Shown: positions 3,045 to 54,618 of the stretch, piece after piece
Numbering within the stretch: the stretch's first letter is position 1
How the letters are laid out: every line of letters starts with the position of its first letter
IMG/VR virus record: IMGVR_UViG_3300005056_000001
Location: 62,001 to 126,000 of that record
Strand: one strand, 5' to 3'
Length of the DNA stretch: 64,000 bases
Notes under the pieces: generated by a model
Databases searched by the model: none
What the model saw: the letters and a program-made list of their open reading frames with translations, nothing else
What the model was told of the DNA's origin: nothing
Program-made: the position numbers and the translations under genes

Positions 3045-3911
3045 TTATAGGTTAATTTTAGCTGTTGGGTGTGTTGGTTTTGTGGTTAGGTTGTTGTTGC
3101 TTAATTCTACAAGTTTCAACTTTGTCAGATATTGAATGTTTGGTGGCTTTGTTAATTGGTTGTTATTCAGGAATAACCATTCCAATTTTGCTAAACCTTT
3201 AAGTATTGGAGGATCCGTAAGTTGGTTATTATTCAGGTCTAACCAATCCAAGTTGGCCAAGTAGTTGAGGTTTGGCAGGGTCGTTAGTTGGTTATTTCCT
3301 AAGTCTATACGCTCCAAGCTGACCAACGAATCTAGGTTTGGTGGTGTATTTAGTTGATTGCGGTTCAAGTATAGCGACTTTAATTTGGTTAAATCTTTAA
3401 GATTCGGTGGTTTGGTTAATCGGTTATTATTCAAATTTACATACACCAACTTAGCCAAACCATTAAGATTTGGTGGGGTTGTTAATTGATTATTCTCTAA
3501 TTCTAAAAGGTTCAAATTTATTAATGAATCAATATTCGGTGGGGCTGTTAGTTGTGTACAACTCAAATCTAGATACTCCAAATTAACTAGACCATCAAGA
3601 TTGGGCGGTTTTGTTAGATGGATGTTATTTATATGCAAAACAGTCAAGTTAATCAAACCGTCAAATATTGGTGGGGCTGTTATCTTGGTGTTATTTATAC
3701 ACACTCGCTTTAATTTAAACACCTGCTCAACCTTGGAAAATAATTCGTCTGTGTATTTAACCTCGCCATGCATTAGTAGGAATTGATATGTATTAATTAT
3801 GTCAGGAAATACACTTAGTACATTCACATTCCCGTTACGAATTTCAATCATTGCAATATCAACATTTTCGACACCAATTGTCGAAAGTAACCGTTTTATT
3901 TTATTCTTCAT
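3045..3911 (-). CDS. LRR protein, family A (22-aa modules; 10 modules)
   Basis: N-cap IKRLLST..NIDIAM..RNGNVNVLSVFP; LxxLxLxxNQLTTPPxL repeats; C-cap THPTAKINL. Confidence 0.95.
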   Translation of the reverse strand: MKNKIKRLLSTIGVENVDIAMIEIRNGNVNVLSVFPDIINTYQFLLMHGEVKYTDELFSKVEQVFKLKRVCINNTKITAPPIFDGLINLTVLHINNIHLTKPPNLDGLVNLEYLDLSCTQLTAPPNIDSLINLNLLELENNQLTTPPNLNGLAKLVYVNLNNNRLTKPPNLKDLTKLKSLYLNRNQLNTPPNLDSLVSLERIDLGNNQLTTLPNLNYLANLDWLDLNNNQLTDPPILKGLAKLEWLFLNNNQLTKPPNIQYLTKLKLVELSNNNLTTKPTHPTAKINL

Positions 3912-3963
3912 TTCTGTCTTGTTATATAGTGATGGTATGTCACCGTGGATTAAATTGTCATGC

Positions 3964-4986
3964 TTAGATGTTAATTTTTGCTGTTGGGTGTGTTAGCTGT
4001 ATTTTTAGGTGTGTTAGGTTTGGTGTTAGGCTGTTGTTCTCTAAACCTAAAAACTCTAGATTAGCCAAACTATCAACGTTTGGCGGAGTCGTTAATTGAT
4101 TGCCGTCTAGATATAACCACTTTAAACTTACCAATCCTTCAAGTATTGGTGGCGCAGTTAATTGATTGTCGTCTAAGTGCAAATGTCTTAACATGACCAA
4201 GCCTTCAAGTATCGGTGAAATTGTTAGTCTATTGTGGTTCAGGAATAACCGATCCAACTTTATCAAACCTTCAAGTATTGGTGGGTGATTCAGCTTGTTG
4301 TCCTCTAAATCCAACCTCTCCAAATTGACTAGACCATCAAGTATCGGTGGACGGCTCAAACTGTTGGTTGTTAAATCCAAACGCTTCAACTGTATCAAAC
4401 CTCCAAGTATTGGAGGTTCTATTAGTCGATTGTAGCTCAGATCTAAAGCCTCTAACCTGTACAATCCATTAAGAACAGGCGGGAGTGTTAGTTTGTTGTG
4501 GTTAATGTACACATGCTCTAGATTGACCAACCCCCCAAGAATGGGCGGTGTCGTTAATTTGTTGTTGGTCAAGCTTAATTTCTTCAGCTTGACCAAGCCC
4601 TCGAGGCTTGGTGGTGTAGTTAATCTGTTGTTGCTTAACACCAACCTCTTTAGGTTTACCAAACCGTTAAGAATAGGCGATGTCGATGAGGTTAGTTTAT
4701 TGTTGCTCAGATATAACTGTTCCAAATTAACCAATCCATCAAGAATTACTATGTGCTTTAGGTTGTTGTTTAAGTATAAACGCTTCAGTCTGAAAACTTG
4801 CTCAATCTTACAAAATATATCATCCGTGGCTTTAACCTTGTCATTACACAGTAGGAATTTATAGGTGTCGAGTATGTTCGGAAACACACTCAACACATCC
4901 ACGTTCCCGTTGCGAAAATTAGCCATTGCAAGATCTATATTTACATCGTCGCCTGATACTAGGAGTTGTTTTATTTTATTGTTCAT
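3964..4986 (-). CDS. LRR protein, family A (12 modules)
   Basis: Start reset to the ATG at 4986 (MNNKIKQLL), just after the upstream stop; same caps; ends THPTAKINI. Confidence 0.95.
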   Translation of the reverse strand: MNNKIKQLLVSGDDVNIDLAMANFRNGNVDVLSVFPNILDTYKFLLCNDKVKATDDIFCKIEQVFRLKRLYLNNNLKHIVILDGLVNLEQLYLSNNKLTSSTSPILNGLVNLKRLVLSNNRLTTPPSLEGLVKLKKLSLTNNKLTTPPILGGLVNLEHVYINHNKLTLPPVLNGLYRLEALDLSYNRLIEPPILGGLIQLKRLDLTTNSLSRPPILDGLVNLERLDLEDNKLNHPPILEGLIKLDRLFLNHNRLTISPILEGLVMLRHLHLDDNQLTAPPILEGLVSLKWLYLDGNQLTTPPNVDSLANLEFLGLENNSLTPNLTHLKIQLTHPTAKINI

Positions 4987-4990
4987 TCTT

Positions 4991-5845
4991 TTAATCTTCC
5001 TTAAGGCTATACAAATCAAAAAATTTCACAAAATCAGCACAGTCCTCATTCGTTTTAAATTTTATTTCGGCTCCATTATTCGAGGCAAAAAATCGAATCG
5101 ACTTGACACAACTCTCCTTGTTTTCTAGCTTATAGGTCTGTATTACCATACTATCCCCGCTATTTTTTGGAATATCGGCATATAGTTCCGATATCACAGG
5201 AATCCCTGTCTCATACAGACTCAAGGCCCTAAGCAAGGCACGCAGTCTCCAACAACCGCTACTCTCTAGGGTGCTTTGATAAGTCCAAAGAGAATAAAGC
5301 CATACATCGGTTTTCAATGATTTACCTTTGATGTTCATTCTTTTTTGACTGTGTAAGACAGACTTTAAGTCTTCCTTGCACTTATGTACGCCGCTATCAA
5401 AAAGACCTTGTCCGTTTAATTGTTGGACATACACAGGAAGCAATTCGGTGGACAGATCCCTCATATTCACAAGCGTTGACTTTGTGTCACTGTCAATATT
5501 TAAATCAAGGTTATACGCATGGTTTAAGTATCTTGTGTATCTGTCAATGATGTCATAGACACGACACATGTGTATAATTTCCAAACGCTCGGACAGTTTA
5601 GAAAAATTATATTCCAAGACATCCTCCCTGTCGGAAACATCGTCACCCTTGATCCAAAATTTTTCGGGCGGGCAATTGTACTTGTGGAGCTCCATTAGTT
5701 GGTCAATATACTTTCTGTGGGCATCATTGGACTCGTTCAGCCCGTCCAAGTCGGCCTGAAGAATTGCCAAATATTCACGGTCTGACTTTGAGAAAATTGA
5801 TTTTTCTTCTAATTCAACATTTAAGATGTCGTTTAATAATGTCAT
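4991..5845 (-). CDS. hypothetical protein (284 aa)
   Basis: Long ORF. The C-terminus SIRFFASNNGAEIKF..DCADFVKFF resembles ends of proteins I recall beside methylase-helicase genes (unverified). Confidence 0.7.
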   Translation of the reverse strand: MTLLNDILNVELEEKSIFSKSDREYLAILQADLDGLNESNDAHRKYIDQLMELHKYNCPPEKFWIKGDDVSDREDVLEYNFSKLSERLEIIHMCRVYDIIDRYTRYLNHAYNLDLNIDSDTKSTLVNMRDLSTELLPVYVQQLNGQGLFDSGVHKCKEDLKSVLHSQKRMNIKGKSLKTDVWLYSLWTYQSTLESSGCWRLRALLRALSLYETGIPVISELYADIPKNSGDSMVIQTYKLENKESCVKSIRFFASNNGAEIKFKTNEDCADFVKFFDLYSLKED

Positions 5846-7030: not shown

Positions 7031-7972
7031 TTAAATGACGATCTCTGCCGTGGGATGTGTTGGTGGGATGGTTAATTGGTTGTTTTTCAAGTTTAAATAC
7101 CTCAACTTAACCAACCCATCAAGATTGGGAGATGTTGCTAACAGATTGTTTTTTAAATCTATAAACTCCAAGTTGATTAGCGAATCAAGGTTTGGGGGAG
7201 AACTTAATTTGTTGTTTCTCAAAAATAACATCTCCAACTTAACCAAGTCTTCAAGATTCGGTGGGGTCGTTAGTTGGTTGACTCCCAAATTCAAACGCTC
7301 CAAGGTAACCAAACCGTTTAGTGTTGGTGTTTTGGTTAGTTGGTTATGGCTAAGGTATAAAATCTTTAAATTTACCAACCCTGAAGTGTTCGGGGTAATC
7401 GTCAATTGGTTATTGTCCAAGTTTAAATATTCCAACTTAACCAATCCTTCAAGATTTGGTGGGGCTGTCAGTTGATTAATCTTCAAGTTTAAATATTCCA
7501 AGTTTATCAAGCCTTCAAGTATTGGCGGTTTTGTCAAATCATTGTCCTCCAAATTTAAATACTCTAACCGATACAAATTAACCAAACCCTCAAGATTTGG
7601 AGCAATCGTTAATTTATTATTGGTCAAATTTAAAACCCTTAAGCTGACTAGACCTTTTAGTATTGGCGGGGTGGTTAAGTGGTTGTTATACAAAAATAAC
7701 AGCGTCAGGTTCACTAACCCTTCGAGTATTGGCGGGGTTGTTAGTTGCATATTGTCTAAAGATAGTGTTTTTATTTTAAACACCTGCTCAACCTTACAAA
7801 ACAAGTCGTCAGACACATTTACTTTGTTGTGACTTACCAAAAAATCATATGTGTCAAGTATCCTAGGAAAAATACTCAACACATCAACATTCCCGTTACG
7901 AAAATTAGCCATTGCGAGTTCTATGTTTGCATCGTCGCCTGTGGTTAGTAGTTGTTTTATTTGGTTGTGCAT
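7031..7972 (-). CDS. LRR protein, family A (11 modules)
   Basis: MHNQIKQLLTTGDDANIELAMANFRNGNVDVLSIFP cap; 22-aa repeats; ends THPTAEIVI. Confidence 0.95.
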   Translation of the reverse strand: MHNQIKQLLTTGDDANIELAMANFRNGNVDVLSIFPRILDTYDFLVSHNKVNVSDDLFCKVEQVFKIKTLSLDNMQLTTPPILEGLVNLTLLFLYNNHLTTPPILKGLVSLRVLNLTNNKLTIAPNLEGLVNLYRLEYLNLEDNDLTKPPILEGLINLEYLNLKINQLTAPPNLEGLVKLEYLNLDNNQLTITPNTSGLVNLKILYLSHNQLTKTPTLNGLVTLERLNLGVNQLTTPPNLEDLVKLEMLFLRNNKLSSPPNLDSLINLEFIDLKNNLLATSPNLDGLVKLRYLNLKNNQLTIPPTHPTAEIVI

Positions 7973-8001
7973 TGTTTTTTGTTGTTTTGTGTCGCCGTGG
8001 A

Positions 8002-9000
8002 TTAAATATCAATATGTGCCGTAGGGTGTGTTGGTGTACTTGTTAGTTGGTTGTTCTCTAAATCTAAACGATCCAAATTAACTAAAGTATCAATGATTGG
8101 TGATGTCGTCAGTCGGTTGTTGTATAAGTACAAAGCTCTTAGATTGGTCAATAATTTAAGATTAGGTGGTGTAGTTAATTGGTTATCGCCCAAATCCAAC
8201 CACATCAACCCTACCAAACCTTCAATAATTGTTGTGTTGGTTAATCGGTTACAATTCAAATACAAACAAGTCAAGTTAATTACCCCCCTAAGATCAGGAG
8301 AGCTCGTCAATACGTTACTGCTCAAATCTAACCACACTAGGTTAACCAATCCTTCAAGAATTAGTGGTGTCGTCAGTCGGTTCTCGCTCAAATCCAAACG
8401 CTTCAATTTTGCTAAATTCATAAGCTTTGGTGGTGTCGTTAATCGGTTTCTGCCTAGGGTTAAACGCTCCAAATTCACTAACGTATTAAGTGTTGGTGAA
8501 TCTGTTAGTTTGTTACTGCCTAAGTTTAAACCCTTTAAATTAACCAATCCATCAACTATTGGCGGATTAGTCAGTTGGTTATTGGTCAAATATAGAACCT
8601 CTAACCTTACCAACTTATCAAGAATCGGCGAAGTGGTTAACTTGTTATTATTCAAGTATAACCGCTTTAAATTAACCAACCCTTCAAGTATTGGCGGATT
8701 CGTTAATTGGTTCTTCCCCAAGTCCAAAACCTCCAAATTAATCAATCCCTCAAGTATTGGCGGACTAGTTAGTCGGTTACTAACTAAACTTAATCGTTTC
8801 AATCTAAAAACCTGCTCAACCTTAGAAAATAAGTCATCCGTGGATTTTACCTTGGCGTGCCATAGCAAGAATTTATACGTGTCAAATATCCTAGGAAAAA
8901 TACTCAACACATCAACATTCCCATTACGAAAATTAGCCATTGCGAGTTCTATGTTTACATCGTCGCCCGTGGTTAGTAGTTGTTTTATTTGGTTGTGCAT
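8002..9000 (-). CDS. LRR protein, family A (12 modules)
   Basis: First ~125 nt nearly identical to those of the 7031-7972 gene; ends THPTAHIDI. Confidence 0.95.
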   Translation of the reverse strand: MHNQIKQLLTTGDDVNIELAMANFRNGNVDVLSIFPRIFDTYKFLLWHAKVKSTDDLFSKVEQVFRLKRLSLVSNRLTSPPILEGLINLEVLDLGKNQLTNPPILEGLVNLKRLYLNNNKLTTSPILDKLVRLEVLYLTNNQLTNPPIVDGLVNLKGLNLGSNKLTDSPTLNTLVNLERLTLGRNRLTTPPKLMNLAKLKRLDLSENRLTTPLILEGLVNLVWLDLSSNVLTSSPDLRGVINLTCLYLNCNRLTNTTIIEGLVGLMWLDLGDNQLTTPPNLKLLTNLRALYLYNNRLTTSPIIDTLVNLDRLDLENNQLTSTPTHPTAHIDI

Positions 9001-9067: not shown

Positions 9068-9556
9068 CTATTCGGTGTCTTCAAAAAGTCTTAGATCTTT
9101 TGACTGTACAAGATATTTTAGATCTTTTATCTGTACAAGATGTGGCACATTACCTTTAAGCACAACACATGTCTTGTCAGTCATGAATTTAACAACACAA
9201 ACAGAACCTAATTTCAGCGTGTGAGGTTTCGAACCACTTTCGAAATTGCTATTCCCAATCACCACAACACTATTCCCAATCTCAATCCTCGGAACAACGG
9301 AAACAACGGGAATATTCCCAATAACATCCCCAACACAATCAACCTCCTCAATCATATACTCCCCACCCGTAAACACGGTCTCAATCGCTTGGAGCTTTTC
9401 GATGTAAATCTCAAGATTTGACATCATTGCAACAAGGGCCTCTTTTTGTGTTGCCCCATATCCTCCGATATGTTCGTTTATGTCGGAGAGGTAGGCCTCA
9501 AATGATTGATGCTTTCCTTTGCCGTCGTTGTGTAGTTTGATTTTTATGTTTTCCAT
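9068..9556 (-). CDS. hypothetical protein (162 aa)
   Basis: ORF in operon; the C-terminal part (GNSVVVIG..GSVCVV) looks KOW/SH3-like. Confidence 0.7.
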   Translation of the reverse strand: MENIKIKLHNDGKGKHQSFEAYLSDINEHIGGYGATQKEALVAMMSNLEIYIEKLQAIETVFTGGEYMIEEVDCVGDVIGNIPVVSVVPRIEIGNSVVVIGNSNFESGSKPHTLKLGSVCVVKFMTDKTCVVLKGNVPHLVQIKDLKYLVQSKDLRLFEDTE

Positions 9557-9558
9557 GT

Positions 9559-9891
9559 TTAGTTGCAGTTACTTTCTTTCCAACCTTTTTTATAGGTGGA
9601 TTCGATTAGGTTATTAATATGTTTTTGCACGGATTCAAAGGGTTCAACCCTCAAGACTATTTTGTTTACGACGTCATACACGTCTTGGCTTGTTTTCTTG
9701 GGATCAGAAAAAGTTGATGTTATTATTTGGCCCAATACACCCTTCTTGTTTACGTATACCACCACATCCAAGATACTCACAGAAGGGTCTAGTTTGTAAC
9801 AGACCTCATTGACGAACATGTCCATGTGACACCCGTCTTTTTTAAGGACAGCCCAACCACCTTCTTCTTTACATTCTCCTATTTTAATCAT
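9559..9891 (-). CDS. hypothetical protein (110 aa)
   Basis: ORF in operon. Confidence 0.7.
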   Translation of the reverse strand: MIKIGECKEEGGWAVLKKDGCHMDMFVNEVCYKLDPSVSILDVVVYVNKKGVLGQIITSTFSDPKKTSQDVYDVVNKIVLRVEPFESVQKHINNLIESTYKKGWKESNCN

Positions 9892-9903: not shown

Positions 9904-11649
9904 TTACATATTAAAATTGTGATAAATATTCCCGTCGGGTGCCATTGTAACCTCACCATCAATCACAGGAAGTTCCTTTAATGCAATTGCCATAATACCC
10001 TTTTCACGACACAAATCTGCCGTGTGGTTATAGACAGTCGGGTTGGTACAAATAACCGCCCTGTACCCCTCCAAATCGCTTGGTGACACAACATCCCTCA
10101 TTAATATTTCGGAAGCATCCAATGTAATAACATCATTGCCGCTCAAAAGTATTCCTTTGAATGACGGAATCTTATCTGTGACGAATGTGGACACTTCTAT
10201 ATTGGGCACCACATGGTCAAGCAAAGACTTTGTTATTTTGCCTTGTTGGTAGAGCTCGTTGTAGTAGTTGGCCTTGGCACGGGGCTGTATGTAGGCATCC
10301 TTTATTTGTGTGACAATAATACCGTCTTCTGTTGTGATATACTCGTACACGGTTGGTGCTTGGCGATAATCCTTTAGGGTTTTTGATATCCAATCCACAT
10401 AGTCGCAGGTATTCACATCAAACCTTTCTTCCTTGGTGCCCATATTAAACTCGGTACCGTCACCAAACACATATTCGCCAAACAGACCGATCTTTCCTGT
10501 GAAGGGGTCATGATTATAAATAACACCCGTGGTATTTGCCTCCTTGTACACCTGAATACCCAAGCCAAAACCAAACCCCCATTCCTTGGGAAATGTGTTT
10601 CTGTCCTTATTTTCTTTGATTATACGCACAACCTCATCCTCAAGACAGACCTTTTGGGTGTCAATAACCCATGAGTCCAATAGTCCCGACATAGGACGAA
10701 ATGGGGATGTTCTAAGCATAACAAGATTATTTCCCACCATTTTCTTTGACTTCCCAATTTTTCTTTGTGCAGACAGACATTTTGGATCCGAACCATATAA
10801 ACCGTGCTCGTATATTGCCTCACACTCGTCATAAGACAATGCAATAAATCTAGGAACAGACAAACCACGTTCCTTTGCCTCGGTTAATTTGTTGTACTTG
10901 GCCCCGAATTTCAAAAAATCGTCTCCAAAAACACCAATACCCTCCAACATGTCGTCAAAGTCCATTCCTACACCCTTGGTTTCACTTCCTGTTTTTATGG
11001 CATCCAACAACGGCAAAACCTTCTGACTGTCTCCGAATTCCATGACAATCTCGTCTTTGCCAAGTCTGTTATGGTATTCAATGACCGTCATTAATTGTTC
11101 CATGGTAGGATTTTTTGCACAAAGCTCCCACTTCCATCTACTCAGCTTTATTAGTTGATTCACCTCCCATCCGTCTGACTTGGCGGCAGGATTTAAACTA
11201 TGGGAATGTATGAACGGTGTGGCTGCCCCAACATAAATAGCACCATCAGGAGAAATAACAGCCGAGCCGTAATCCTGTAATTTATTGAGTGGCATATATT
11301 TTATGTCCTCGGCAAAGTGACGCTTGAATTGTCTTGGCAAAAACTCGTTGGTCAAAGAGGTGTTGTATGGGGCAACAAAAGACGTCTTATTGTTTTTGTT
11401 TAGGGTTCTGAGTTCCTTTCTTCTTTTTTTAAGCACGACTTTTTTTGCCTGCCAAGAATCGACATACATTTTGTGCGTGTCGAGGTATTCAATATTTTCG
11501 TCCCTAAGCCTGAAATATTTGTCTTCGTCGAGTTCGATTTTTGTTTGCTTCTTTTGCATGTCCAAATAAAAGTCCAATGTATTCACATCAAATTGTAGAT
11601 CATAGATATTTTGACATATGTCGTGGGCCTGTTGTTCTATTGTTTTCAT
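9904..11649 (-). CDS. PPDK/PEP-synthase-like dikinase (ATP-grasp + phosphohistidine domain, no PEP barrel)
   Basis: GAKYNKLTEAKERGLSVPRF (cf. GGKGANLAEM..GLPVPPGF), VMLRTS..MSGLLDS, TGVIYNHDPFTGKIGLFGEY, C-terminal NHTADLCREKGI (cf. SHAAIVARxxG). Confidence 0.75.
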   Translation of the reverse strand: MKTIEQQAHDICQNIYDLQFDVNTLDFYLDMQKKQTKIELDEDKYFRLRDENIEYLDTHKMYVDSWQAKKVVLKKRRKELRTLNKNNKTSFVAPYNTSLTNEFLPRQFKRHFAEDIKYMPLNKLQDYGSAVISPDGAIYVGAATPFIHSHSLNPAAKSDGWEVNQLIKLSRWKWELCAKNPTMEQLMTVIEYHNRLGKDEIVMEFGDSQKVLPLLDAIKTGSETKGVGMDFDDMLEGIGVFGDDFLKFGAKYNKLTEAKERGLSVPRFIALSYDECEAIYEHGLYGSDPKCLSAQRKIGKSKKMVGNNLVMLRTSPFRPMSGLLDSWVIDTQKVCLEDEVVRIIKENKDRNTFPKEWGFGFGLGIQVYKEANTTGVIYNHDPFTGKIGLFGEYVFGDGTEFNMGTKEERFDVNTCDYVDWISKTLKDYRQAPTVYEYITTEDGIIVTQIKDAYIQPRAKANYYNELYQQGKITKSLLDHVVPNIEVSTFVTDKIPSFKGILLSGNDVITLDASEILMRDVVSPSDLEGYRAVICTNPTVYNHTADLCREKGIMAIALKELPVIDGEVTMAPDGNIYHNFNM

Positions 11650-11658
11650 AATGTTGGT

Positions 11659-12498
11659 TTAAAAAATGACTGTGACATCAGGAAGCAATTTTTGAATCCT
11701 GTCCTGTTCGTCAATGGAAAGGTGACACTCATGAAGGATTAGTCTTGTTAATTTTTTCAATTCCTTGATACTGTTGGGAATTGTGTTTATGGGATTATGA
11801 CTAAGATCCAAAATTTCAAGTGATTCTAGGCCCGATATCGCCTGTGGTATTTCTTTGATGCCATTACCCGACAAATCAAGCAGCTCCAATGATTTTAGCC
11901 CACACAGGCAATTAGGAATAACATTAATATTGTTAGACCCTAGCTCAAGTGCCGCAAGATTGACAAGCTTTTCTATCCCTGAAGGAACAAGCTTTAGGTT
12001 GTTGTGAGATAAACGAATATCTGCCAAGTTTACACAGTCGTATAGCTCAACAGGAAACTCCTCGAATTTATTTCGACTTAGGTCAATCTCCTCCAACCAA
12101 CACAGCGCACTCAAGTCAGGAAGGCTTGCGAGCTTATTTCTTTGTGCCAATAATGTCCTTAGTCCTCCAAACATATTCAACCCATGAGGGAAAGAATCAA
12201 GTCCGCACCTGCTCACGTCCAAACCTTCTTGCTTTCTCAACACATCATAAGAGAGTCCTGTAATCTCGGACAGTTCCCTGTGTTTGTATGCACTTGATAC
12301 ATTTTCGGGATAGACATAATAATCAACCTCCTTTAAATTTGTTGGGTGGTGTATAACAACCTTTCCGTCATACTCGCACAGCTTCCCTATGATATGACTG
12401 CCGTCTTTTAGGTATGCCAATACATTGTCTCCAAAAATAACATTCCATGTGTTACTTTTGTTTAGTACGGGCACGTGTATTTCTATTTTTGCTTTCAT
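11659..12498 (-). CDS. LRR protein, family B (23-aa repeats) with distinct N-terminal domain
   Basis: LxxLxLxxNxxxxxP repeats after a ~95-aa domain shared with the adjacent gene. Confidence 0.9.
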   Translation of the reverse strand: MKAKIEIHVPVLNKSNTWNVIFGDNVLAYLKDGSHIIGKLCEYDGKVVIHHPTNLKEVDYYVYPENVSSAYKHRELSEITGLSYDVLRKQEGLDVSRCGLDSFPHGLNMFGGLRTLLAQRNKLASLPDLSALCWLEEIDLSRNKFEEFPVELYDCVNLADIRLSHNNLKLVPSGIEKLVNLAALELGSNNINVIPNCLCGLKSLELLDLSGNGIKEIPQAISGLESLEILDLSHNPINTIPNSIKELKKLTRLILHECHLSIDEQDRIQKLLPDVTVIF

Positions 12499-12516
12499 TG
12501 TTTTTTTGTTGGGTGG

Positions 12517-13314
12517 TTAAAAATGCACATGAACACTCGGCAACATTTTTTTTATTCGAATAAGTTCGTCGTTCGAAATATTTGTGTGTTCTAGATACAA
12601 ATTCTCTAGCTTATGCAAATTTTTGATACTGTCGGGGAGTGTTGTGAGGGGATTACCACACAAATCCAAGTATACCAAAGACTCTAGGTAGCCAATGCTC
12701 TTAGGAATCTTAACAAGCTTATTATGTCCCAAATCAAGATCCGTCAATTGTTTTAGGTTGCCTATTGACTCAGGCAAAACCTCAAGGACGTTATTGCTCA
12801 AATTTAAATCCTCTAGGTTGTTAATATCACCAATAGAGTCGGGTAATTTTTTTATCTTGTTGCGTTGGAGGTTTAGGCTTGTCAGATCCTTTAGACCCAT
12901 TTCCTCGGGCAAGGTTTCTATGTTGTTATTGGTGACACCAAGATTCCGTAGCCCCTCTAGGTCACAAACACCGTCAGGCAGGCACGTGAGATTTTTGTTA
13001 TGCAAAAACACATCATGTGGTCTTTGTTTGATGTCGGTCATTGTTCTTTGGGTGGCAGACAGTAATTCTTTAAGTTGGAATGCCTCATCAATGTTGTTTA
13101 ATTCGACATAATAAACCACCTCATCCCAATGTGTTGGCGTTCCGACCTTGTCGGTGTCGTTATTTGGAACCAACTCTCCCAATACCGTTTCGCCCTCCTT
13201 GAGGAAGCATATAACATTGGTGTCAAGCGGAAAGTTATAGTCGCCATTGCTTATTATGACAGGTTTTTTGAATTCTATTTCAAGGTTTACCCTGAATGTT
13301 TGCGGATTTTCCAT
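12517..13314 (-). CDS. LRR protein, family B, paralog of 11659-12498
   Basis: Start reset to the ATG at 13314 (MENPQ); shared N-domain (N.ICFLKEG..LG.L..PT..EV.YYV) followed by LPDSIGxL repeats. Confidence 0.9.
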   Translation of the reverse strand: MENPQTFRVNLEIEFKKPVIISNGDYNFPLDTNVICFLKEGETVLGELVPNNDTDKVGTPTHWDEVVYYVELNNIDEAFQLKELLSATQRTMTDIKQRPHDVFLHNKNLTCLPDGVCDLEGLRNLGVTNNNIETLPEEMGLKDLTSLNLQRNKIKKLPDSIGDINNLEDLNLSNNVLEVLPESIGNLKQLTDLDLGHNKLVKIPKSIGYLESLVYLDLCGNPLTTLPDSIKNLHKLENLYLEHTNISNDELIRIKKMLPSVHVHF

Positions 13315-13447
13315 ATTTTGTTTTATATTTTTTTTTTGTATGATTACAAATATAAACAAAAAATCCGTACCAAAGAATTTTGATACGGATTTTAATATAA
13401 AAATGTTTTTTGTGTGGGTTGGTAAAATTGGCAACGAAGGCTTTTAA

Positions 13448-13654
13448 TTAACCAACAACTTCGATTTCCCTGATTTTATCGTCTTTAATAGGAGCCCAAT
13501 AGCTGTCCCACATCAAGTATATATCATCACCTTCAAAGCCTATAATTTCCGCCCTGTATCGGATATGATCACTAAAACCTGCCCAAAAATCAATCACGTC
13601 ACCTTCATTGAATTTTTTGTGAGATTTCGATAGGGTTTTTGCGAATTCAATCAC
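13448..13654 (-). CDS. hypothetical protein (68 aa)
   Basis: Start overlaps the upstream stop. Confidence 0.65.
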   Translation of the reverse strand: MIEFAKTLSKSHKKFNEGDVIDFWAGFSDHIRYRAEIIGFEGDDIYLMWDSYWAPIKDDKIREIEVVG

Positions 13655-14487
13655 CTTTGACTTGGGCGACCTCCAACATAATCGCTATTACTATACCTAT
13701 CAACCAAATCTATAAATAAACCCCTCTCTAACGCTTCACCAAAATTCTTTTTAGCCATCATCTTAGGATCAATAATCTCAAGCGTATAGAAGTCGTTTGA
13801 ATGAAACCTAACACCCACATTGTTTGTTGTATCTTTGTTGTTTCCTGACCACCTAGATGTTGCACTAGGGAATCTATACAAGTCCTTGGCTAAATATAAA
13901 TTTTGACTCAACGGGTCTCTTTGTTTTAAAAAGTCGTCATCATCTGTGTATCGGTCAAATATATAGGACGCTGTTCGTTGTAGCTGAAAGTTGACCAAGC
14001 CTCTAATTACAAGCCAATTAGTCCATTTTTTCGGACGACCATTTAATGGCTTGTATGTTCCTAGAATAGAAAACACACGTTCAGTTTTAAAAAAGCTCAC
14101 GGTTGCTTTCATCATTTCTTCACCAATTTGAAGATCAATAACCTCCCCATCCGAGGCACCATCAACCAAGTCGTTGAAGGCGTTCACAAAGGACGCAATG
14201 GAGTCATACTCCCAATTCATGTTGTTGCACACCTTTAAATCGTCTCGGTTTCTATCGTCTTGGTCGTGGAAACGTATGGTGCTGCCTGTTCCTCGTGTTC
14301 CTGCATCGGTGACGTCGCTCACTACCACAGAACCTCCCCGATTTTTGTCTCTTTTTAATTCAAATCGCTGTCCGTTGTGTACCATAAATTCAAGGGTGTC
14401 TATCACACTGTCTATGTGACAAAAATTCATTTTAACCTTGTTTAAATTCTCGTCGTATGCCCCGTTGGGTATGTTTTTTAAGTTCAT
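13651..14487 (-). CDS. paralog family P member 1 (278 aa), unknown function
   Basis: MNLKNIPNGAYD..LNK start; LVIRGLVNFQLQ; FYTLEIIDPK plus a unique tail. Confidence 0.85.
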   Translation of the reverse strand: MNLKNIPNGAYDENLNKVKMNFCHIDSVIDTLEFMVHNGQRFELKRDKNRGGSVVVSDVTDAGTRGTGSTIRFHDQDDRNRDDLKVCNNMNWEYDSIASFVNAFNDLVDGASDGEVIDLQIGEEMMKATVSFFKTERVFSILGTYKPLNGRPKKWTNWLVIRGLVNFQLQRTASYIFDRYTDDDDFLKQRDPLSQNLYLAKDLYRFPSATSRWSGNNKDTTNNVGVRFHSNDFYTLEIIDPKMMAKKNFGEALERGLFIDLVDRYSNSDYVGGRPSQR

Positions 14488-14526
14488 GTTTTTGTGTTAT
14501 TTCTTTGTTTAGTGTTGCTTTTTGGT

Positions 14527-15243
14527 TTATAACTGAAGGTTGGGGTCAATAATCTCAAGTATGTAAAAATAGTTTTGATCAATACTAACCCTAATAGTGT
14601 TGTTTTGGTCATTATCACCTTCCCACCTTGATCTTGCATCAGGATAATTTGCCAAATCATTGGCCAAATATACATTCTTGGACAATGTGTCTCTACTTTT
14701 TAAATTGTCACCATACACATTAAGTGTGTCGGATTCTACTTGTTGTAACTGAAAGTTTGCCAAGCCTCTAACCACAAGCCAATTGCTCCATTTGCGTGGA
14801 CGTTTTTTCAATGGCGGGTAAGTTCCTAGAATGGAAAATGTACGACCCGTACCAAAATATGTTAGAGTAACATTCATGGACACGCCACCAACCTCAACAA
14901 ATTTAATTGCACCATCTGTTGCGGTGCTTGCCGACGCATTGAAGTAGTTTACAAAAGATGTAATAGAATCAAATTCTAGATTCATCCCGTCGCACACCTT
15001 CAAAGAGTCCTTGCTATTGATGTCATGAAACTTCAATCTAACTCCTGTGCCTCTTACTCCTGCATTGGTAACCTCGGAGCATATTATTGAGCCACGAGAC
15101 GGCTCTTTTTTCAATTCGAAGCGTTGGTTATCGTGGATTATATATTTTAATTTGTTTGTCGAGCTGTCAACACGACAAAAATCAAAATTTGTTTTGTTCA
15201 GATCAACGTCATATGCCCCGTTGGGTATGTTTTTTAAATTCAT
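14527..15243 (-). CDS. paralog family P member 2 (238 aa)
   Basis: Same motifs; ends ILEIIDPNLQL. Confidence 0.85.
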   Translation of the reverse strand: MNLKNIPNGAYDVDLNKTNFDFCRVDSSTNKLKYIIHDNQRFELKKEPSRGSIICSEVTNAGVRGTGVRLKFHDINSKDSLKVCDGMNLEFDSITSFVNYFNASASTATDGAIKFVEVGGVSMNVTLTYFGTGRTFSILGTYPPLKKRPRKWSNWLVVRGLANFQLQQVESDTLNVYGDNLKSRDTLSKNVYLANDLANYPDARSRWEGDNDQNNTIRVSIDQNYFYILEIIDPNLQL

Positions 15244-15264
15244 ATTTTGTTATGATTTGGTTGG

Positions 15265-15996
15265 TTATACCCGAATTTTAGGATCAATGATTTTAAGAAA
15301 ATAAGATTCGTCAGGATAAAACACCACATTAACAAAATTACTGTCGATATTCCCATCCTTCCAACTAGCATACGCATTTGTGTCGATATTTATGTCACTA
15401 GCAAAATCCGTGGTATTTTTCATATTTAATGGTGTCTTTGAGTTGTCCTGTCCGTTATCGAAATTATACAAACGAGATACTTCTTGTAGTTGAAAATTCA
15501 TAAGTCCACGAATCACCAATGCTCGTGTCCATTCTTTTGGTCTATTTCTTATTGGTTCATATAGACCCATAAGGGAAAAATATGAACTAGAATCCTTGAC
15601 GCTTACATTTGTCTTGAATTCGTTTTCGTTTAAAGTGACGGTGTCGCTATTAAATTCCCCTCTTGCACCCTTCGAAAGCTTTTCTAGGAGTTTTACCATA
15701 CCCGATATAAGCATATTACCATCACGATATATTCTGTATATACTATTCATTAATTTCGTACTATCATTCCAAATACCATGAATAGTTAATTCGATAATCT
15801 GCCCTCTTTCCATTCCCGATTCTGTAACGTCCTTTAGTGAGATGCTGCCCAAATTCATATTGGTAAATTCAATCTCGTACCGTCTACCTTTGTGTACAAT
15901 ATATTGCATACCATGATACCTAATATCACCGAGGTCTAGTGTTGTTTTATTTAAATCTTTGTCATAAGAACCGTCAGACACATTCGTTAATTTCAT
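15265..15996 (-). CDS. paralog family P member 3 (243 aa)
   Basis: Same motifs; ends LKIIDPKIRV. Confidence 0.85.
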   Translation of the reverse strand: MKLTNVSDGSYDKDLNKTTLDLGDIRYHGMQYIVHKGRRYEIEFTNMNLGSISLKDVTESGMERGQIIELTIHGIWNDSTKLMNSIYRIYRDGNMLISGMVKLLEKLSKGARGEFNSDTVTLNENEFKTNVSVKDSSSYFSLMGLYEPIRNRPKEWTRALVIRGLMNFQLQEVSRLYNFDNGQDNSKTPLNMKNTTDFASDINIDTNAYASWKDGNIDSNFVNVVFYPDESYFLKIIDPKIRV

Positions 15997-16039
15997 TTTT
16001 TTTAGTTGTAGTTGTTAATATTGTATGGACACAATATAA

Positions 16040-16090
16040 TTAATCACAGTCAACCCGAATTTTAGGATCAACAATTTCGAGAGTGTAATA
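16040..16090 (-). pseudogene. orphan 3' tip of a family P gene
   Basis: Translates YYTLEIVDPKIRVDCD-stop with no start codon; shares ACCCGAATTTTAGGATCAA with sites near 15269 and 16349. Confidence 0.75.
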
Positions 16091-16095
16091 CTAGT

Positions 16096-17076
16096 CTAAT
16101 TTACAACTGCCCAATACTCCTGTATTTCACCAACGGTTCTTAACCATTCCAAGTCTGTTGGTAGATTAATCTCTACTTCATGGTAAGGCAATGCCTCAAT
16201 TTTTTGACGGGCAATACGTGCTTGTTCGTCGGTTCCGATTAATTGAGAAGTGTAACCTGCTCTGTACCATTCAAACTTATCAGTAAATCTTAAGGTGTCA
16301 CCGTCCTTGATAACCCTTCCATTCATATCCATGATTTGGTCGTCGGATACCCGAATTTTAGGATCAATGATCTCTAGTGTGTAGAATTTATTTGAATGAA
16401 AACGAACCCCAACAAAATTGCTGTCATCGTTTCGACCACTCCAATTAACACCTGTACGACCAAAATCGCTGATCTCCTTGGCCAAATCCATATTAAACTT
16501 AACGTCCAATGGTTTCCTTGTGGTCTCCTGTCCGCTATAATCGTCAAATTTGTATGACGAGGTTTGTTGGAGTTGAAAATTCATTAGTCCACGTATCACC
16601 AATACACGTGACCATTTTTTCGGACGATTGACAATTTTCTTGTAGAATCCCATGATAGAAAATGCAGAACCCGAGCCCTCTATACTAATGTTTGTCGAAA
16701 ATTCATGCCCGTCTAGGTTCACGGTACCACGATTGTAGTTGCCACTTGCACCCTTGGCACCCTTTTCGAGTAATTTTATCAGACCCACCATACTTGCAGT
16801 ACCGCCACCAAAAACATTGATGGCATTCATTAGCACAACACTGTCCCCCCACTCACCCTCGATGGTCAGCTCGGTAATTTTGCCCCTTGCCATGCCTGCA
16901 TCCGTGACATCCTTTAGTGATATGCTCCCAATGTTCCAATTGGTAAACTTTATCTCGTAACGACGTCCTTTGTGGACGATATAGTGCATACCATCGTTCC
17001 AAACATCCCCCAAATCAAAAGTGGTCTTATTTAGTTTGCGGTCATAAACACCGTCCGATATATTTTTTAAGTTCAT
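16096..17076 (-). CDS. paralog family P member 4 with YopX-like C-terminal extension
   Basis: Start reset to the ATG at 17076 (MNLKNISDG). After LEIIDPKIRV comes DMNGRVIKDGDTL (cf. YopX DKNGKEIYEGDI). Confidence 0.85.
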   Translation of the reverse strand: MNLKNISDGVYDRKLNKTTFDLGDVWNDGMHYIVHKGRRYEIKFTNWNIGSISLKDVTDAGMARGKITELTIEGEWGDSVVLMNAINVFGGGTASMVGLIKLLEKGAKGASGNYNRGTVNLDGHEFSTNISIEGSGSAFSIMGFYKKIVNRPKKWSRVLVIRGLMNFQLQQTSSYKFDDYSGQETTRKPLDVKFNMDLAKEISDFGRTGVNWSGRNDDSNFVGVRFHSNKFYTLEIIDPKIRVSDDQIMDMNGRVIKDGDTLRFTDKFEWYRAGYTSQLIGTDEQARIARQKIEALPYHEVEINLPTDLEWLRTVGEIQEYWAVVN

Positions 17077-17119
17077 TTTCGTTGCTTTTAAGGTTTGAGT
17101 TAATAGTGTATGTACCAAC

Positions 17120-17376: not shown

Positions 17377-17410
17377 AAAGGTCATACCCACAAGTGTGAG
17401 TATGACCTTT
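17377..17410 (-). terminator. rho-independent terminator
   Basis: AAAGGTCATAC..GTATGACCTTT stem with a minus-strand U-tract, after the gene ending at 17428. Confidence 0.75.
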
Positions 17411-28830: not shown

Positions 28831-28862
28831 CGGGTGTAAGATAATAATAATTTTTTGTTTAT

Positions 28863-29210
28863 TCAAACTTTATTGTCCCGAACAGTTCTTTTGTTTTCAA
28901 TGGTGCTCATTTTAATAATAACACTGTCGCTCTGTGTTTCCACATCGGATACCAAGTACAATAAATCATTGTTCACAACCCTCACATGTTTATGGAGTTC
29001 CTTTGGGAAGGTTGTGCCCTTTCTGAAGAAATCAAGATTCTTTAAGAATGCCCCACATTCTATTTCGAACCTCAGCGTAGTCACAATTGCCCCACTCTTG
29101 CAGGAAAAGTATTGATTGTACCTGACGCTTTCAATTGTTGTCTCATTAAAAGAGTTGTATAGAACAGAATCAACTGTCAGACTCCTGTTGTTTTTAAGTG
29201 TTAGTCGCAT
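28863..29210 (-). CDS. hypothetical protein (115 aa)
   Basis: In operon with the SbcCD fusion. Confidence 0.7.
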   Translation of the reverse strand: MRLTLKNNRSLTVDSVLYNSFNETTIESVRYNQYFSCKSGAIVTTLRFEIECGAFLKNLDFFRKGTTFPKELHKHVRVVNNDLLYLVSDVETQSDSVIIKMSTIENKRTVRDNKV

Positions 29211-37511: not shown

Positions 37512-38198
37512 ATGAAAACAACGAACAAAATAAATACTACCATTCTAAAATTACTTACATCAGGAAGTCGCAAAGACATAGATCATGCAATGTCAGTGTT
37601 TCGTGATGAAGATGTGGATGTGTTATGCATGTTCCCAAAAATAGTTGACACGTTCGAATTTCTGCTAGGTCATGGCAAGGTAAACCCCACGGACGATTTG
37701 CTTTTTAAGGCCGAGCAGGTCTTTAGGGTGGAGGGTTTATATTTAGTGAATAAACAATTGACGAGTCCCCCAATACTTGATGGTTTGGTGAATCTAGATT
37801 CGCTATTTTTATCGAATAATCAATTGACGATTCCTCCAATACTTGACGGGTTAGTAAACCTAACATATTTAGGGTTAGAGAACAATCAATTGACGATTCC
37901 CCCAATACTTCATGGGTTAAATAACTTGATATATTTATATCTAGAGAACAACCAACTAACCACACCACCGATTTTTGACGGTTTAGTGAACCTAAAATCT
38001 TTATGGTTGAATAATAACCAACTAGCTAACACTCCATCACTCGAAGGGTTGGTAAAGTTGGAGTTTTTGCATTTAAGCGACAATAAACTAAAAACACCGC
38101 CAAATCTTGATGGCTTGGTCAAGTTACAGGAGATATACTTAAGCCGCAATCCACTAGGTAACCCACCAACCCACAAAAGCGCAGTAATTCATATTTAA
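37512..38198 (+). CDS. LRR protein, family A (7 modules)
   Basis: Cap LKLLTSGSRKDIDHAM..DVLCMFP; ends THKSAVIHI. Confidence 0.95.
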   Translation: MKTTNKINTTILKLLTSGSRKDIDHAMSVFRDEDVDVLCMFPKIVDTFEFLLGHGKVNPTDDLLFKAEQVFRVEGLYLVNKQLTSPPILDGLVNLDSLFLSNNQLTIPPILDGLVNLTYLGLENNQLTIPPILHGLNNLIYLYLENNQLTTPPIFDGLVNLKSLWLNNNQLANTPSLEGLVKLEFLHLSDNKLKTPPNLDGLVKLQEIYLSRNPLGNPPTHKSAVIHI

Positions 38199-38201
38199 GA
38201 C

Positions 38202-38284
38202 AAGTGTTAAAATTTTGTTAAAATATCCATTATTCTTTGATGGTGTCTAAATAAACACGTACTTGGTGTTATTAAATAATCAAA
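38202..38284 (+). repeat. 83-bp direct repeat, copy 1 (promoter module)
   Basis: Near-identical to 40319-40401; its 3' part (CTTGGTGTTATTAAATAATCAAA) also precedes the gene at 37512. Confidence 0.95.
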
Positions 38285-38295
38285 TAGTAAATATC

Positions 38296-39050: not shown

Positions 39051-39073
39051 ACATATCAAAACAGTACCACATT

Positions 39074-39649: not shown

Positions 39650-39672
39650 GGATATATTAAAAACATTACACC

Positions 39673-46624: not shown

Positions 46625-46727
46625 TTGTTGGAACAATTGAGAATATATGCATATTGTTTTGTTGATGTGAGATTTTATGATTACATTGTGTGACTGTTAA
46701 TAACGAAATCAAGAAGTATTGAATAAT

Positions 46728-47462: not shown

Positions 47463-47483
47463 AATACCAAAAAATACAATAAC

Positions 47484-53075: not shown

Positions 53076-53111
53076 AACAACTGTCCCTAACCATTTAATA
53101 CCTAGTAAAAT

Positions 53112-53804: not shown

Positions 53805-53901
53805 TGTTTTGTTAAGACGCATTGGTTTTGGTGATATATTTTGTTTATTCGGATTTTATTTGTAATATTGTACTATCAATTAATGATTAACAAACAAGGA
53901 T

Positions 53902-54615: not shown

Positions 54616-54618
54616 AAC

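What the first reader, a model, noticed from the sequence alone, without database searches (positions are those of the whole stretch)
9904..11649. PPDK-like dikinase missing its pyruvate domain, with an unknown ~230-aa N-terminal region
Seen: ATP-grasp motifs and a C-terminal His domain retaining the histidine (NHTADLCREKG), but no PEP/pyruvate TIM barrel. Established: enzymes with this swivel architecture and another substrate domain (rifampin phosphotransferase, glucan-water dikinase) phosphorylate non-pyruvate substrates. Inference: the N-terminal region could bind a novel substrate such as a nucleotide, signalling molecule or protein.
Basis: partly seen in the sequence, partly recalled or inferred. 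Interest (0 to 1): 0.6.

Follow-up and report, generated by a model that had tools for sequence, protein, structure and literature searches.

The report
Truncated phage dikinase, orphan N-terminus
A giant marine phage encodes two very divergent copies of a cut-down pyruvate-phosphate-dikinase-type enzyme that keeps the ATP-binding and phosphate-carrying histidine parts, has no pyruvate part anywhere in the genome, and carries a front region that matches nothing known, so it probably phosphorylates something other than pyruvate.

Summary
Window 9904-11649 (-) is a 581-aa ORF in a complete 368-kb jumbo myovirus, probably of a marine Bacteroidota host.

- **Core, residues 241-581.** This is a PPDK-type ATP-grasp plus phosphohistidine swivel domain: hhalign probability 99.3%, E 7e-21; Foldseek to PPDK E 4e-15; VIA-align Z 25.9 to 1kbl residues 14-511.
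- **Catalytic residues.** The equivalents of K22, R92, E323, Q335, R337 and H455 are present as K251, R313, E436, Q448, K450 and H542. Only the D321 equivalent deviates (Val434).
- **No pyruvate domain.** There is no PEP/pyruvate TIM barrel in the protein or anywhere in the phage genome.
- **N-terminal region, residues 1-240.** It matched nothing in any search, including an exhaustive scan of 1.84 billion proteins.
- **Paralog.** A 711-aa copy lies 17 kb away, with a different N-terminal helical part.

Pfam and PHROGs do not recognise the protein. The kind is no longer unprecedented: M. tuberculosis VadK is a truncated PPDK that autophosphorylates, and phages carry an uncharacterised "kinase" family, phrog_18609.

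Most likely it is an ATP-driven, His542-mediated phosphotransferase for a non-pyruvate acceptor. The acceptor is unknown. Links to RNA ligase and to LRR neighbours were tested and are not established. I rate it a new variant of a known kind, of moderate interest.

The parts
9904..11649 (-). Whole gene: 581-aa truncated PPDK-type dikinase (P0001), stop codon included.
   Evidence: ORF list and translation. Only 3 open codons lie upstream of the ATG.
11380..11649 (-). Residues 1-90: long helices, possibly a coiled coil, ending in a basic KKRRK patch (residues 74-78). This part differs in sequence and length from the paralog.
   Evidence: AF2 secondary structure H4-40, H42-51, H53-64 and H67-86 at pLDDT 50-75. 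Paralog alignment. Composition.
11266..11379 (-). Residues 91-128: low-confidence, probably flexible linker.
   Evidence: pLDDT 28-40. Poorly conserved between the paralogs.
10930..11265 (-). Residues 129-240: orphan alpha/beta module conserved between the two paralogs (34 invariant positions, net charge -6). It is the candidate acceptor- or partner-binding module.
   Evidence: Alignments A1 and A7. No family, fold or profile match. Composition.
10294..10929 (-). Residues 241-452: ATP-grasp nucleotide-binding domain. It holds K251 (10897-10899), R313 (10711-10713), V434 (10348-10350), E436 (10342-10344), Q448 (10306-10308) and K450 (10300-10302).
   Evidence: hhalign, 30-sequence alignment A3, AF2, Foldseek and VIA-align to PPDK and RPH, codon check.
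10183..10293 (-). Residues 453-489: helical linker between the ATP-grasp and the swivel domain. It corresponds to the PPDK linker of about residues 341-389.
   Evidence: Helices H456-468 and H474-480. PDB profile alignment to 1dik 330-374.
9907..10182 (-). Residues 490-581: phosphohistidine swivel (PEP-utilizers mobile) domain. The catalytic His542 is at 10024-10026, and the motif NHTADLCREKG is at 9997-10029.
   Evidence: Sub-threshold PF00391 match (13.1 bits). VIA-align to the PPDK phosphoryl-carrier domain 2fm4, Z 9.6, model 489-581. His aligned to PPDK H455. The motif is conserved in P0002, P0003 and P0004.
11659..12498 (-). Upstream neighbour, 9 nt away: 279-aa leucine-rich-repeat protein, probably co-transcribed.
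   Evidence: Pfam LRR_8 and LRR_4. No strong minus-strand terminator lies between 13360 and 9000. Binding to P0001 is not supported.
9559..9891 (-). Downstream neighbour, 12 nt away: 110-aa protein of unknown function (P0128).
   Evidence: Translation. Only a weak phrog_14269 match.
9068..9556 (-). Next downstream gene: 162-aa protein of unknown function (P0129).
   Evidence: Translation. No family match.

Best explanation
P0001 is a phage-encoded, very divergent, truncated member of the PPDK / PEP-synthase / rifampin-phosphotransferase dikinase superfamily. It has an orphan N-terminal region (1-240), a PPDK-type ATP-grasp (241-452), a helical linker (453-489) and a C-terminal phosphohistidine swivel domain (490-581).

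**Proposed mechanism**
1. The ATP-grasp binds Mg-ATP.
2. His542 attacks the beta-phosphate. AMP leaves, the gamma-phosphate is lost as Pi, and His542 is left phosphorylated.
3. The swivel domain moves on its linker and hands the phosphoryl group to an acceptor that is not pyruvate.
4. The acceptor is chosen either by the conserved alpha/beta module at 129-240 in cis, or by a separate partner protein.

The two paralogs share the catalytic engine but differ in the N-terminal helical part. This fits two enzymes aimed at different targets during infection.

**Status of each element**
- Shown here: the fold, the homology, retention of the catalytic residues, and absence of a pyruvate domain.
- Inferred: activity, and that the N-terminal region confers specificity.
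- Unknown: the acceptor.
For: - **Homology and fold.** hhalign probability 99.3%, E 7e-21. Foldseek to PPDK E 4e-15. VIA-align Z 25.9 to 1kbl and Z 22.7 to RPH, covering model 241-581.
- **Catalytic residues.** Near-invariant superfamily positions are kept in P0001: G249, K251, R313, G322, Q366, G375, G404, E436, Q448, H542, R548, G573. His542 aligns with PPDK His455. Lys22 is essential in RPH and PPDK (PMC4844700).
- **Purifying selection on the engine.** The paralog P0002 is 37-39% identical, with these residues invariant. The His motif is conserved in metagenomic fragments P0003 and P0004 and in contig L016.
- **No pyruvate domain.** There is no PEP-utilizers_C in the protein or the genome.
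- **Precedents for non-pyruvate acceptors and two-domain forms.** These are RPH (PMC4844700), the two-component HpeHI (PMC12167813) and VadK, which autophosphorylates on His422 with ATP and Mg (PMC13400623).
- **The N-terminal alpha/beta module is conserved between paralogs while the extreme N-terminus is not**.
Against: - No biochemical data exist, and no RNA runs hold the gene.
- The equivalent of PPDK Asp321 is Val in both paralogs, while every other aligned family member has Asp or Glu. From my own recollection of the PPDK literature this residue is an acidic metal-site residue. Against this, the Mg-ligand mutant E297A of RPH stayed active.
- The N-terminal region could not be modelled (pLDDT below 50), so nothing shows a binding pocket.
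- That module is acidic (net -6), which argues weakly against nucleic-acid binding.
- Genomic context gives no consistent pointer to an acceptor.
Confidence: 0.6

Rival explanations
1. VadK-like regulatory kinase. The protein autophosphorylates on His542 and acts by binding and modulating host or phage proteins. The N-terminal helices serve as the docking element, and there is no small-molecule acceptor.
For: - VadK has the same two-domain core without a third catalytic domain. It autophosphorylates and co-purifies with methylcitrate-cycle enzymes (PMC13400623).
- P0001 has long N-terminal helices.
- It sits among genes for LRR proteins, a protein-protein interaction fold.
Against: - P0001 does not group with the VadK-like sequence P0016 in the core tree.
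- VadK has no N-terminal extension.
- The complex prediction with the upstream LRR protein gave no answer (score 0.00).
- No partner has been identified.
Confidence: 0.2
2. Nucleic-acid end-healing kinase. The dikinase phosphorylates 5'-OH RNA ends for an RNA ligase, replacing a T4-Pnk-type P-loop kinase in tRNA or RNA repair.
For: - The paralog P0002 is followed 109 nt downstream by a PF09414 RNA ligase (E 2e-18).
- The distant relative P0007 has a PF09414 ligase two genes downstream.
- No AAA_33 Pnk-like kinase was found in the phage.
Against: - P0001 itself has no ligase nearby.
- RNA ligase is absent from all 40 IMG/VR records with short kinase relatives. It is also absent from phages SIO-2, DLP_5 and RcZahn.
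- The conserved N-terminal module is acidic.
- No known dikinase acts on nucleic acids.
Confidence: 0.07
3. Catalytically impaired scaffold, or a futile ATP pyrophosphatase (ATP to AMP + 2 Pi) that perturbs the host energy charge and has no dedicated acceptor.
For: - Val replaces the conserved acidic residue at the PPDK Asp321 position in both paralogs.
- RPH variants retain ATP pyrophosphatase activity uncoupled from substrate phosphorylation.
- No acceptor domain is recognisable.
Against: - All other ATP-site residues, the His motif and its surrounding residues are conserved across at least four lineages. This is costly to maintain for a scaffold.
- A 110-aa module conserved between the paralogs in front of the ATP-grasp would be unnecessary for futile hydrolysis.
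Confidence: 0.1
4. An ordinary metabolic PPDK or PEP synthase carried as an auxiliary metabolic gene, as phage 'PPDK' genes are often annotated.
For: The top structural and sequence matches are PPDKs. Related phage genes are annotated as PPDK (PMC12038007).
Against: - The protein ends with the His domain.
- There is no PEP/pyruvate TIM barrel in the protein or anywhere in the genome, so it is not a split enzyme either.
- It fails the Pfam PPDK_N model altogether.
Confidence: 0.02

Closest known systems
Pyruvate, phosphate dikinase (PPDK, EC 2.7.9.1; e.g. Clostridium symbiosum 1kbl/1dik)
   Same: - The ATP-grasp nucleotide-binding domain and the phosphohistidine swivel domain are in the same order and relative pose (Z 25.9 over 332 residues).
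- It has the PPDK-type short 'R-[ST]-[SG]-x3-[SP]-M-[AS]-G' segment rather than the longer PEP-synthase form.
- Equivalents of K22, R92, E323, Q335, R337 and H455 are present.
   Different: - It has no PEP/pyruvate TIM-barrel domain.
- It lacks the helical subdomain of the PPDK nucleotide domain (about 112-196).
- It has an extra 240-aa N-terminal region.
- Val stands at the Asp321 position and Lys at the Arg337 position.
- It is about 15-18% identical and below every Pfam threshold.
VadK (Rv1127c) of Mycobacterium tuberculosis, a truncated PPDK acting as an autophosphorylating kinase (PMC13400623)
   Same: It has the two-domain core (ATP-grasp plus His domain) with no PEP/pyruvate domain. VadK is the experimental precedent that such a core autophosphorylates on the catalytic His with ATP and Mg.
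   Different: - VadK (about 490 aa) has no long N-terminal extension.
- It is cellular and actinobacterial.
- The VadK-like sequence P0016 groups with PPDKs, not with P0001, in the core tree.
Phage 'kinase' / 'pyruvate phosphate dikinase' family phrog_18609 (Vibrio phage SIO-2, vB_VneS_J26 ORF98, Stenotrophomonas DLP_5, Rhodobacter RcZahn, Bacillus phage G gp139)
   Same: These are phage-borne PPDK-type ATP-grasp plus His domain proteins lacking a full pyruvate domain, and they are uncharacterised experimentally.
   Different: - P0001 and P0002 do not hit the PHROG model.
- Most members carry a 140-275-aa C-terminal domain instead of an N-terminal one. That domain is unrelated to the P0001 N-terminus.
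- Their conserved neighbours are a DSP/PTP phosphatase and DNA polymerase A. The DSP/PTP phosphatase has no homologue in this phage, and no DNA polymerase A gene was seen beside either copy.
- The N-terminal extensions of the P0007 subgroup are unrelated.
Rifampin phosphotransferase (RPH-Lm, 5hv3/5fbs; PMC4844700) and the two-component dikinase HpeHI (9goj; PMC12167813)
   Same: The ATP-grasp and the C-terminal swivel His domain match (Z 22.7, model 241-578; HpeI Z 11.6). Both are dikinases that phosphorylate non-pyruvate small molecules through a swivelling phospho-His.
   Different: RPH has a domain of about 440 aa that binds rifampin, inserted between the ATP-grasp and the His domain. P0001 has only a linker of about 37 aa there, and its extra sequence lies in front of the ATP-grasp. 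HpeHI is split into two proteins.
P0008, a 376-aa minimal dikinase on a 204-kb metagenomic phage-like contig
   Same: It is the closest full-length relative outside this phage lineage in the core tree (split support 100). It shares the 'H-T-A-D' sequence after the catalytic His.
   Different: - It has no N-terminal extension.
- It lies beside Ter-type genes (vWA-TerF-like, YAcAr, HAD, PRTase_3, TerC, TerD). TerD (PF02342) is absent from this phage, and none of the genes in the P0008 stretch (L004) has a homologue here.
- The grouping may be long-branch attraction.

Membership tests
PPDK proper (EC 2.7.9.1) | N-terminal ATP-grasp nucleotide-binding domain homologous to PPDK_N | tested here: met
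   hhalign probability 99.3%. VIA-align Z 25.9 to 1kbl 14-511. However, the Pfam PF01326 model gives no hit even at E<=10.
PPDK proper (EC 2.7.9.1) | Central swivel domain with the catalytic histidine (His455 in C. symbiosum) | tested here: met
   His542 aligns with His455. PF00391 is sub-threshold at 13.1 bits. VIA-align to the carrier domain 2fm4 gives Z 9.6.
PPDK proper (EC 2.7.9.1) | C-terminal PEP/pyruvate-binding TIM barrel (PF02896) | tested here: not met
   The protein ends at the His domain. PF02896 is absent from the protein and from the whole genome at E<=1.
Swivelling-His dikinase superfamily (PPDK / PEPS / RPH / GWD) | ATP-site residues equivalent to PPDK K22, R92, D321, E323, Q335 and R337 | tested here: inconclusive
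   K251, R313, E436, Q448 and K450 are present, but the D321 equivalent is Val434 in both paralogs. The residue roles are recalled from the PPDK literature. The K22 role is confirmed in PMC4844700.
Swivelling-His dikinase superfamily (PPDK / PEPS / RPH / GWD) | ATP to AMP + Pi with a phospho-His intermediate | not testable with these tools
   This needs enzyme assays.
VadK-like truncated PPDK | Two-domain architecture without a pyruvate domain | tested here: met
VadK-like truncated PPDK | Common descent with actinobacterial VadK | tested here: not met
   In the ML tree of the core, the VadK-like P0016 groups with PPDK and the phage class-2 kinases, while P0001/P0002 lie on a separate long branch with P0008.
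Phage kinase family phrog_18609 | Match to the PHROG profile | tested here: not met
   There is no hit for P0001 at E<=0.1 or for P0002 at E<=0.01, while P0007, P0008, P0009, P0011 and P0014 hit at 1e-12 to 1e-80.
Phage kinase family phrog_18609 | Conserved neighbourhood (DSP/PTP phosphatase, DNA polymerase A) and a 140-275-aa C-terminal domain | tested here: not met
   The neighbour tally covers 32 lineages. There is no phosphatase homologue in this genome. P0001 has no C-terminal extension.
Rifampin phosphotransferase | Large substrate-binding domain inserted between the ATP-grasp and the His domain | tested here: not met
   Only about 37 linker residues (453-489) separate the domains.
Glucan, water dikinase | His domain N-terminal to the ATP-grasp, with carbohydrate-binding modules | tested here: not met
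   The order of the domains is ATP-grasp then His. No CBM match was found.

The most novel reading that the evidence does not exclude
The two paralogs may form a phage-specific class of targeted dikinases. In this reading a conserved ATP-grasp/phospho-His engine is fused to an orphan N-terminal recognition module. It phosphorylates a host macromolecule or signalling molecule during takeover or counter-defence. The divergent N-terminal helices, and possibly the surrounding LRR proteins, would set the target. That would be a new way for phages to use the swivelling-histidine chemistry, distinct from metabolism and from antibiotic inactivation.
Probability: 0.25. Interest if true: 0.7.

Novelty: new variant of a known kind. 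Interest (0 to 1): 0.5.

Why it matters
Swivelling-histidine dikinases are known mainly from central metabolism (PPDK, PEP synthase), starch phosphorylation, antibiotic inactivation and aromatic catabolism. Truncated forms with regulatory roles have only just been described (VadK).

Phages turn out to carry many PPDK-derived kinases: 188 IMG/VR contigs in one scan. All are uncharacterised and are often mis-annotated as metabolic PPDK.

This gene is the most divergent form seen here. It is invisible to Pfam and PHROGs, it is duplicated within one jumbo phage, and it carries an N-terminal module with no relatives among 1.84 billion proteins.

Identifying its acceptor would show what phages use this chemistry for. 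It would also correct a recurrent annotation error. The catalytic prediction is directly testable with a simple autophosphorylation assay.

Tried and rejected
1. **Family scans.** Pfam, PHROGs, PADLOC and NCBIfam scans of P0001 and P0002 gave no meaningful hit.
2. **Close-relative searches.** tblastn and megablast against 50,697 phage records found nothing. The word-index protein search found only the protein itself. The IMG/VR pattern scan with the paralog pair found nothing.
3. **First AF2 run** with a 2-sequence alignment failed (pLDDT 35).
4. **N-terminal region.**
   - ESM Atlas feature and structure searches gave only sub-0.8 scores and TM of about 0.5 or lower.
   - hhalign against the N-termini of the P0007 family gave probability 0.1%.
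   - hhalign against the C-terminal domains of class-2 phage kinases gave 0.2%.
   - hhalign against its own His domain, as a test for internal duplication, gave 0.9%.
   - All these links are rejected.
5. **RNA-ligase link.** It is real for P0002 and P0007. It is absent in 40 of 40 IMG/VR records and in 3 of 4 isolated phages checked, so it is not a family trait.
6. **Ter-cluster link** through P0008. There is no TerD (PF02342) and no homologue of any gene in the P0008 stretch (L004) in this phage.
7. **PTP-phosphatase link.** The weak Myotubularin hit near P0002 has no CX5R motif, and the family HMM finds nothing in this genome.
8. **LRR-dikinase module duplication.** The LRR genes upstream of the two paralogs are not each other's closest relatives.
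9. **Complex prediction** of P0001 with the upstream LRR protein gave a score of 0.00, which is no verdict and no evidence either way.
10. **Split-PPDK idea.** There is no PEP-utilizers_C in the genome.
11. **Word search with P0008** found only itself.
12. **Literature.** Searches for a phage PPDK-like kinase function found only an annotation-level paper.

Full report
**Setting.** The window is bases 62001-126000 of a 368,109-bp virus record with direct terminal repeats, rated 100% complete. GC content is 38%, and my simple ORF caller gave about 480 ORFs. The phage encodes a tail sheath, a head maturation protease, a ribonucleotide reductase and an NAD-dependent DNA ligase. Its sheath is closest to that of Tenacibaculum phage pT24 (34% identity), followed by other Bacteroidota jumbo phages. 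It is therefore a jumbo myovirus, probably of a marine Bacteroidota host. Small pieces at 99% identity or more occur in subsurface and seawater metagenomes. No RNA run holds the gene.

**The observation.** Window 9904-11649 (-) is an uninterrupted 581-aa ORF, P0001, with only three open codons upstream of its ATG. The motif NHTADLCREKG is residues 541-551. Standard libraries see nothing: Pfam, PHROGs, PADLOC and NCBIfam all return no meaningful hit. A single-sequence search of PDB gives only a marginal PPDK hit at E 0.045.

**Is it really PPDK-like?** Yes.
- The genome holds a paralog, P0002 (711 aa, G000:C1:54253-56388, minus strand). It is 37-39% identical from residue 129 onward.
- I ran a profile of the pair exhaustively against 1.84 billion representatives. 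It found only seven proteins.
  - Two are C-terminal fragments of close kin (P0003, P0004).
  - One is a true PPDK.
  - One is an RPH-like protein.
  - Two, P0007 and P0008, consist of PPDK_N plus PEP-utilizers only.
- hhalign of the pair against 13 such two-domain proteins gives probability 99.3% and E 7e-21 over P0001 175-556.
- With a 30-sequence alignment, AlphaFold2 models residues 246-581 at pLDDT of about 90.
- Foldseek ranks PPDKs first (E 4e-15), followed by PEP synthase, rifampin phosphotransferase and HpeI.
- VIA-align gives Z 25.9 (rmsd 3.7 A, 332 residues, model 242-581 against 1kbl 14-511) and Z 22.7 to RPH.

The ATP-grasp and the swivel domain are thus established.

**Catalytic residues.** In the 30-sequence alignment the near-invariant positions include G249, K251, R313, G322, Q366, G375, G404, E436, Q448, H542, R548 and G573.
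- Through the PDB alignments, H542 corresponds to PPDK His455, E436 to Glu323, Q448 to Gln335 and K450 to Arg337.
- K251 and R313 sit in the GxKG and (V/L)R(S/T)S motifs that hold Lys22 and Arg92. This is my mapping from the alignment and from recalled PPDK numbering.
- Lys22 is essential in RPH and PPDK (PMC4844700).
- The one deviation is Val434, and Val also in P0002, where every other aligned member has Asp or Glu. This is the PPDK Asp321 position.
- The weight of that change is uncertain. In RPH, the Mg-ligand mutant E297A remained fully active.
- The short 'RTSPFRPMSG' segment is of the PPDK type, not the longer PEP-synthase type.

**What is missing.** The protein stops at the end of the swivel domain. 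PF02896, the PEP/pyruvate TIM barrel, is absent from the protein and from all six frames of the genome at E<=1. The enzyme is therefore not split. PEP synthesis is excluded.

**The N-terminal region.**
- Residues 1-90 are predicted as long helices and end in a basic KKRRK patch.
- Residues 91-128 are of low confidence.
- Residues 129-240 form an alpha/beta module with 34 positions invariant between the paralogs and a net charge of -6.
- The extreme N-terminus differs strongly between the paralogs; P0002 has about 125 extra residues there.
- Nothing matches this region. I checked the exhaustive profile search and the ESM Atlas feature and structure searches. I also checked the N-termini of the P0007 family, the C-terminal domains of other phage kinases and the protein's own His domain.
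- Its fold remains unknown, because pLDDT is below 50.

**Relatives and context.**
- P0007, P0008, P0009, P0011 and P0014 match phrog_18609 ('kinase'). That family includes genes annotated as kinase or PPDK in Vibrio phage SIO-2, phage J26, Stenotrophomonas DLP_5, Rhodobacter RcZahn and Bacillus phage G.
- The only paper found on a phage member is in silico (PMC12038007).
- An IMG/VR scan found 188 viral contigs with relatives. By length they fall into three groups: full PPDKs (844-930 aa), a 598-780-aa class with a 140-275-aa C-terminal domain, and minimal forms.
- The middle class has conserved neighbours: a DSP/PTP-type phosphatase in 25 of 32 lineages, and DNA polymerase A. This phage has no homologue of that phosphatase, and P0001 and P0002 do not hit the PHROG.
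- In a maximum-likelihood tree of the core, P0001 and P0002 sit on a very long branch with P0008 (split support 100). They lie outside the PPDK/class-2 clade and the PEPS/RPH clade. Long-branch attraction cannot be excluded.
- P0008 lies in a Ter-type gene cluster. This phage has no TerD (PF02342) and no homologue of any gene in that stretch.

**Local context.**
- P0001 lies in a minus-strand array. An LRR gene ends 9 nt upstream, a second LRR gene lies before that, and two small genes of unknown function follow within 12 nt.
- Terminator-like hairpins on the minus strand lie at 13393-13360 and 17410-17377. There is no strong one between 13360 and 9000, which suggests co-transcription.
- P0002 also has an LRR gene immediately upstream. 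The two LRR genes are not each other's closest paralogs, and the genome has 28 LRR genes in all.
- A complex prediction of P0001 with its upstream LRR protein gave no verdict.
- P0002 is followed by an RNA ligase (PF09414, E 2e-18), and P0007 also has one two genes away. However, the ligase is absent from 40 of 40 viral records with short relatives and from three of four isolated phages checked. I keep this only as a low-probability lead for the paralog.

**Mechanism.** The best-supported reading has four steps.
1. ATP binds in the grasp.
2. His542 is pyrophosphorylated and then left phosphorylated, with release of AMP and Pi.
3. The swivel domain moves on the 453-489 linker.
4. It delivers the phosphoryl group to a non-pyruvate acceptor, selected either by the conserved 129-240 module or by a partner protein.

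This chemistry is established for PPDK, RPH and HpeHI (PMC4844700, PMC12167813). Autophosphorylation of a two-domain core is established for VadK (PMC13400623). For P0001 the fold and residues are shown, the activity is inferred, and the acceptor is unknown.

**Verdict.**
- The protein should not be filed as PPDK, RPH, VadK or phrog_18609, because a defining feature fails for each.
- It works like a swivelling-histidine dikinase.
- It is a new, very divergent variant of a kind with recent precedents, of moderate interest.
- The simple decisive experiment is ATP-dependent, H542-dependent autophosphorylation, followed by an acceptor search.

Noticed in passing
G000:C1:54253-56388 (-), outside the window (L002:1495-3630; L018): There is a second, 711-aa paralog of the dikinase (P0002) with a longer and different N-terminus. 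A PF09414 RNA ligase (P0130, C1:53364-54143) follows it 109 nt downstream, and an LRR gene precedes it.
   Followed up: yes
window 3045-5019, 7031-9000, 11659-13434, 37512-40320, 46719-48526, 52410-56437: This jumbo phage has a 28-member family of leucine-rich-repeat proteins (phrog_6688-like), 19 of them inside the window in several tandem arrays. Their role is unknown.
   Followed up: partly
window 13651-17118 (-): Four tandem paralogous genes (278, 238, 243 and 340 aa) have no family match. They lie just upstream of the LRR-dikinase block.
   Followed up: no
window 13360-13393 (-): A strong terminator-like hairpin (15-bp stem plus T-run) lies inside the predicted 5' end of the LRR ORF 12517-13434, which has a TTG start. 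The true start of that gene is probably further downstream. A similar hairpin lies at 17377-17410.
   Followed up: no
IMG/VR loci L024-L103 (e.g. L039:12564-13229, L040:8638-11025): Phage kinases of 598-780 aa (phrog_18609 type) have a conserved neighbourhood. A DSP/PTP-type phosphatase occurs in 25 of 32 lineages, often in two copies. DNA polymerase A and three unknown families also recur. This is a kinase-phosphatase pairing of unknown function, routinely annotated as metabolic PPDK.
   Followed up: partly
L004:2194-9131: The closest outside relative, P0008 (376 aa), sits in an operon-like row with vWA-TerF-like, YAcAr, HAD hydrolase, PRTase_3, TerC and TerD genes on a 204-kb phage-like contig.
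   Followed up: partly
L016:2-1005: A 1-kb NCBI metagenome contig carries a P0002-like gene (51-61% identity). Its frame shifts near 637-652, which is either an assembly error or a broken copy.
   Followed up: no
window 24700-28866 (-) and 34225-36384 (+): The window also holds a 1388-aa SbcC-like / metallophosphoesterase protein (phrog_35725) and an NAD-dependent DNA ligase (phrog_3869, E 2e-176).
   Followed up: no
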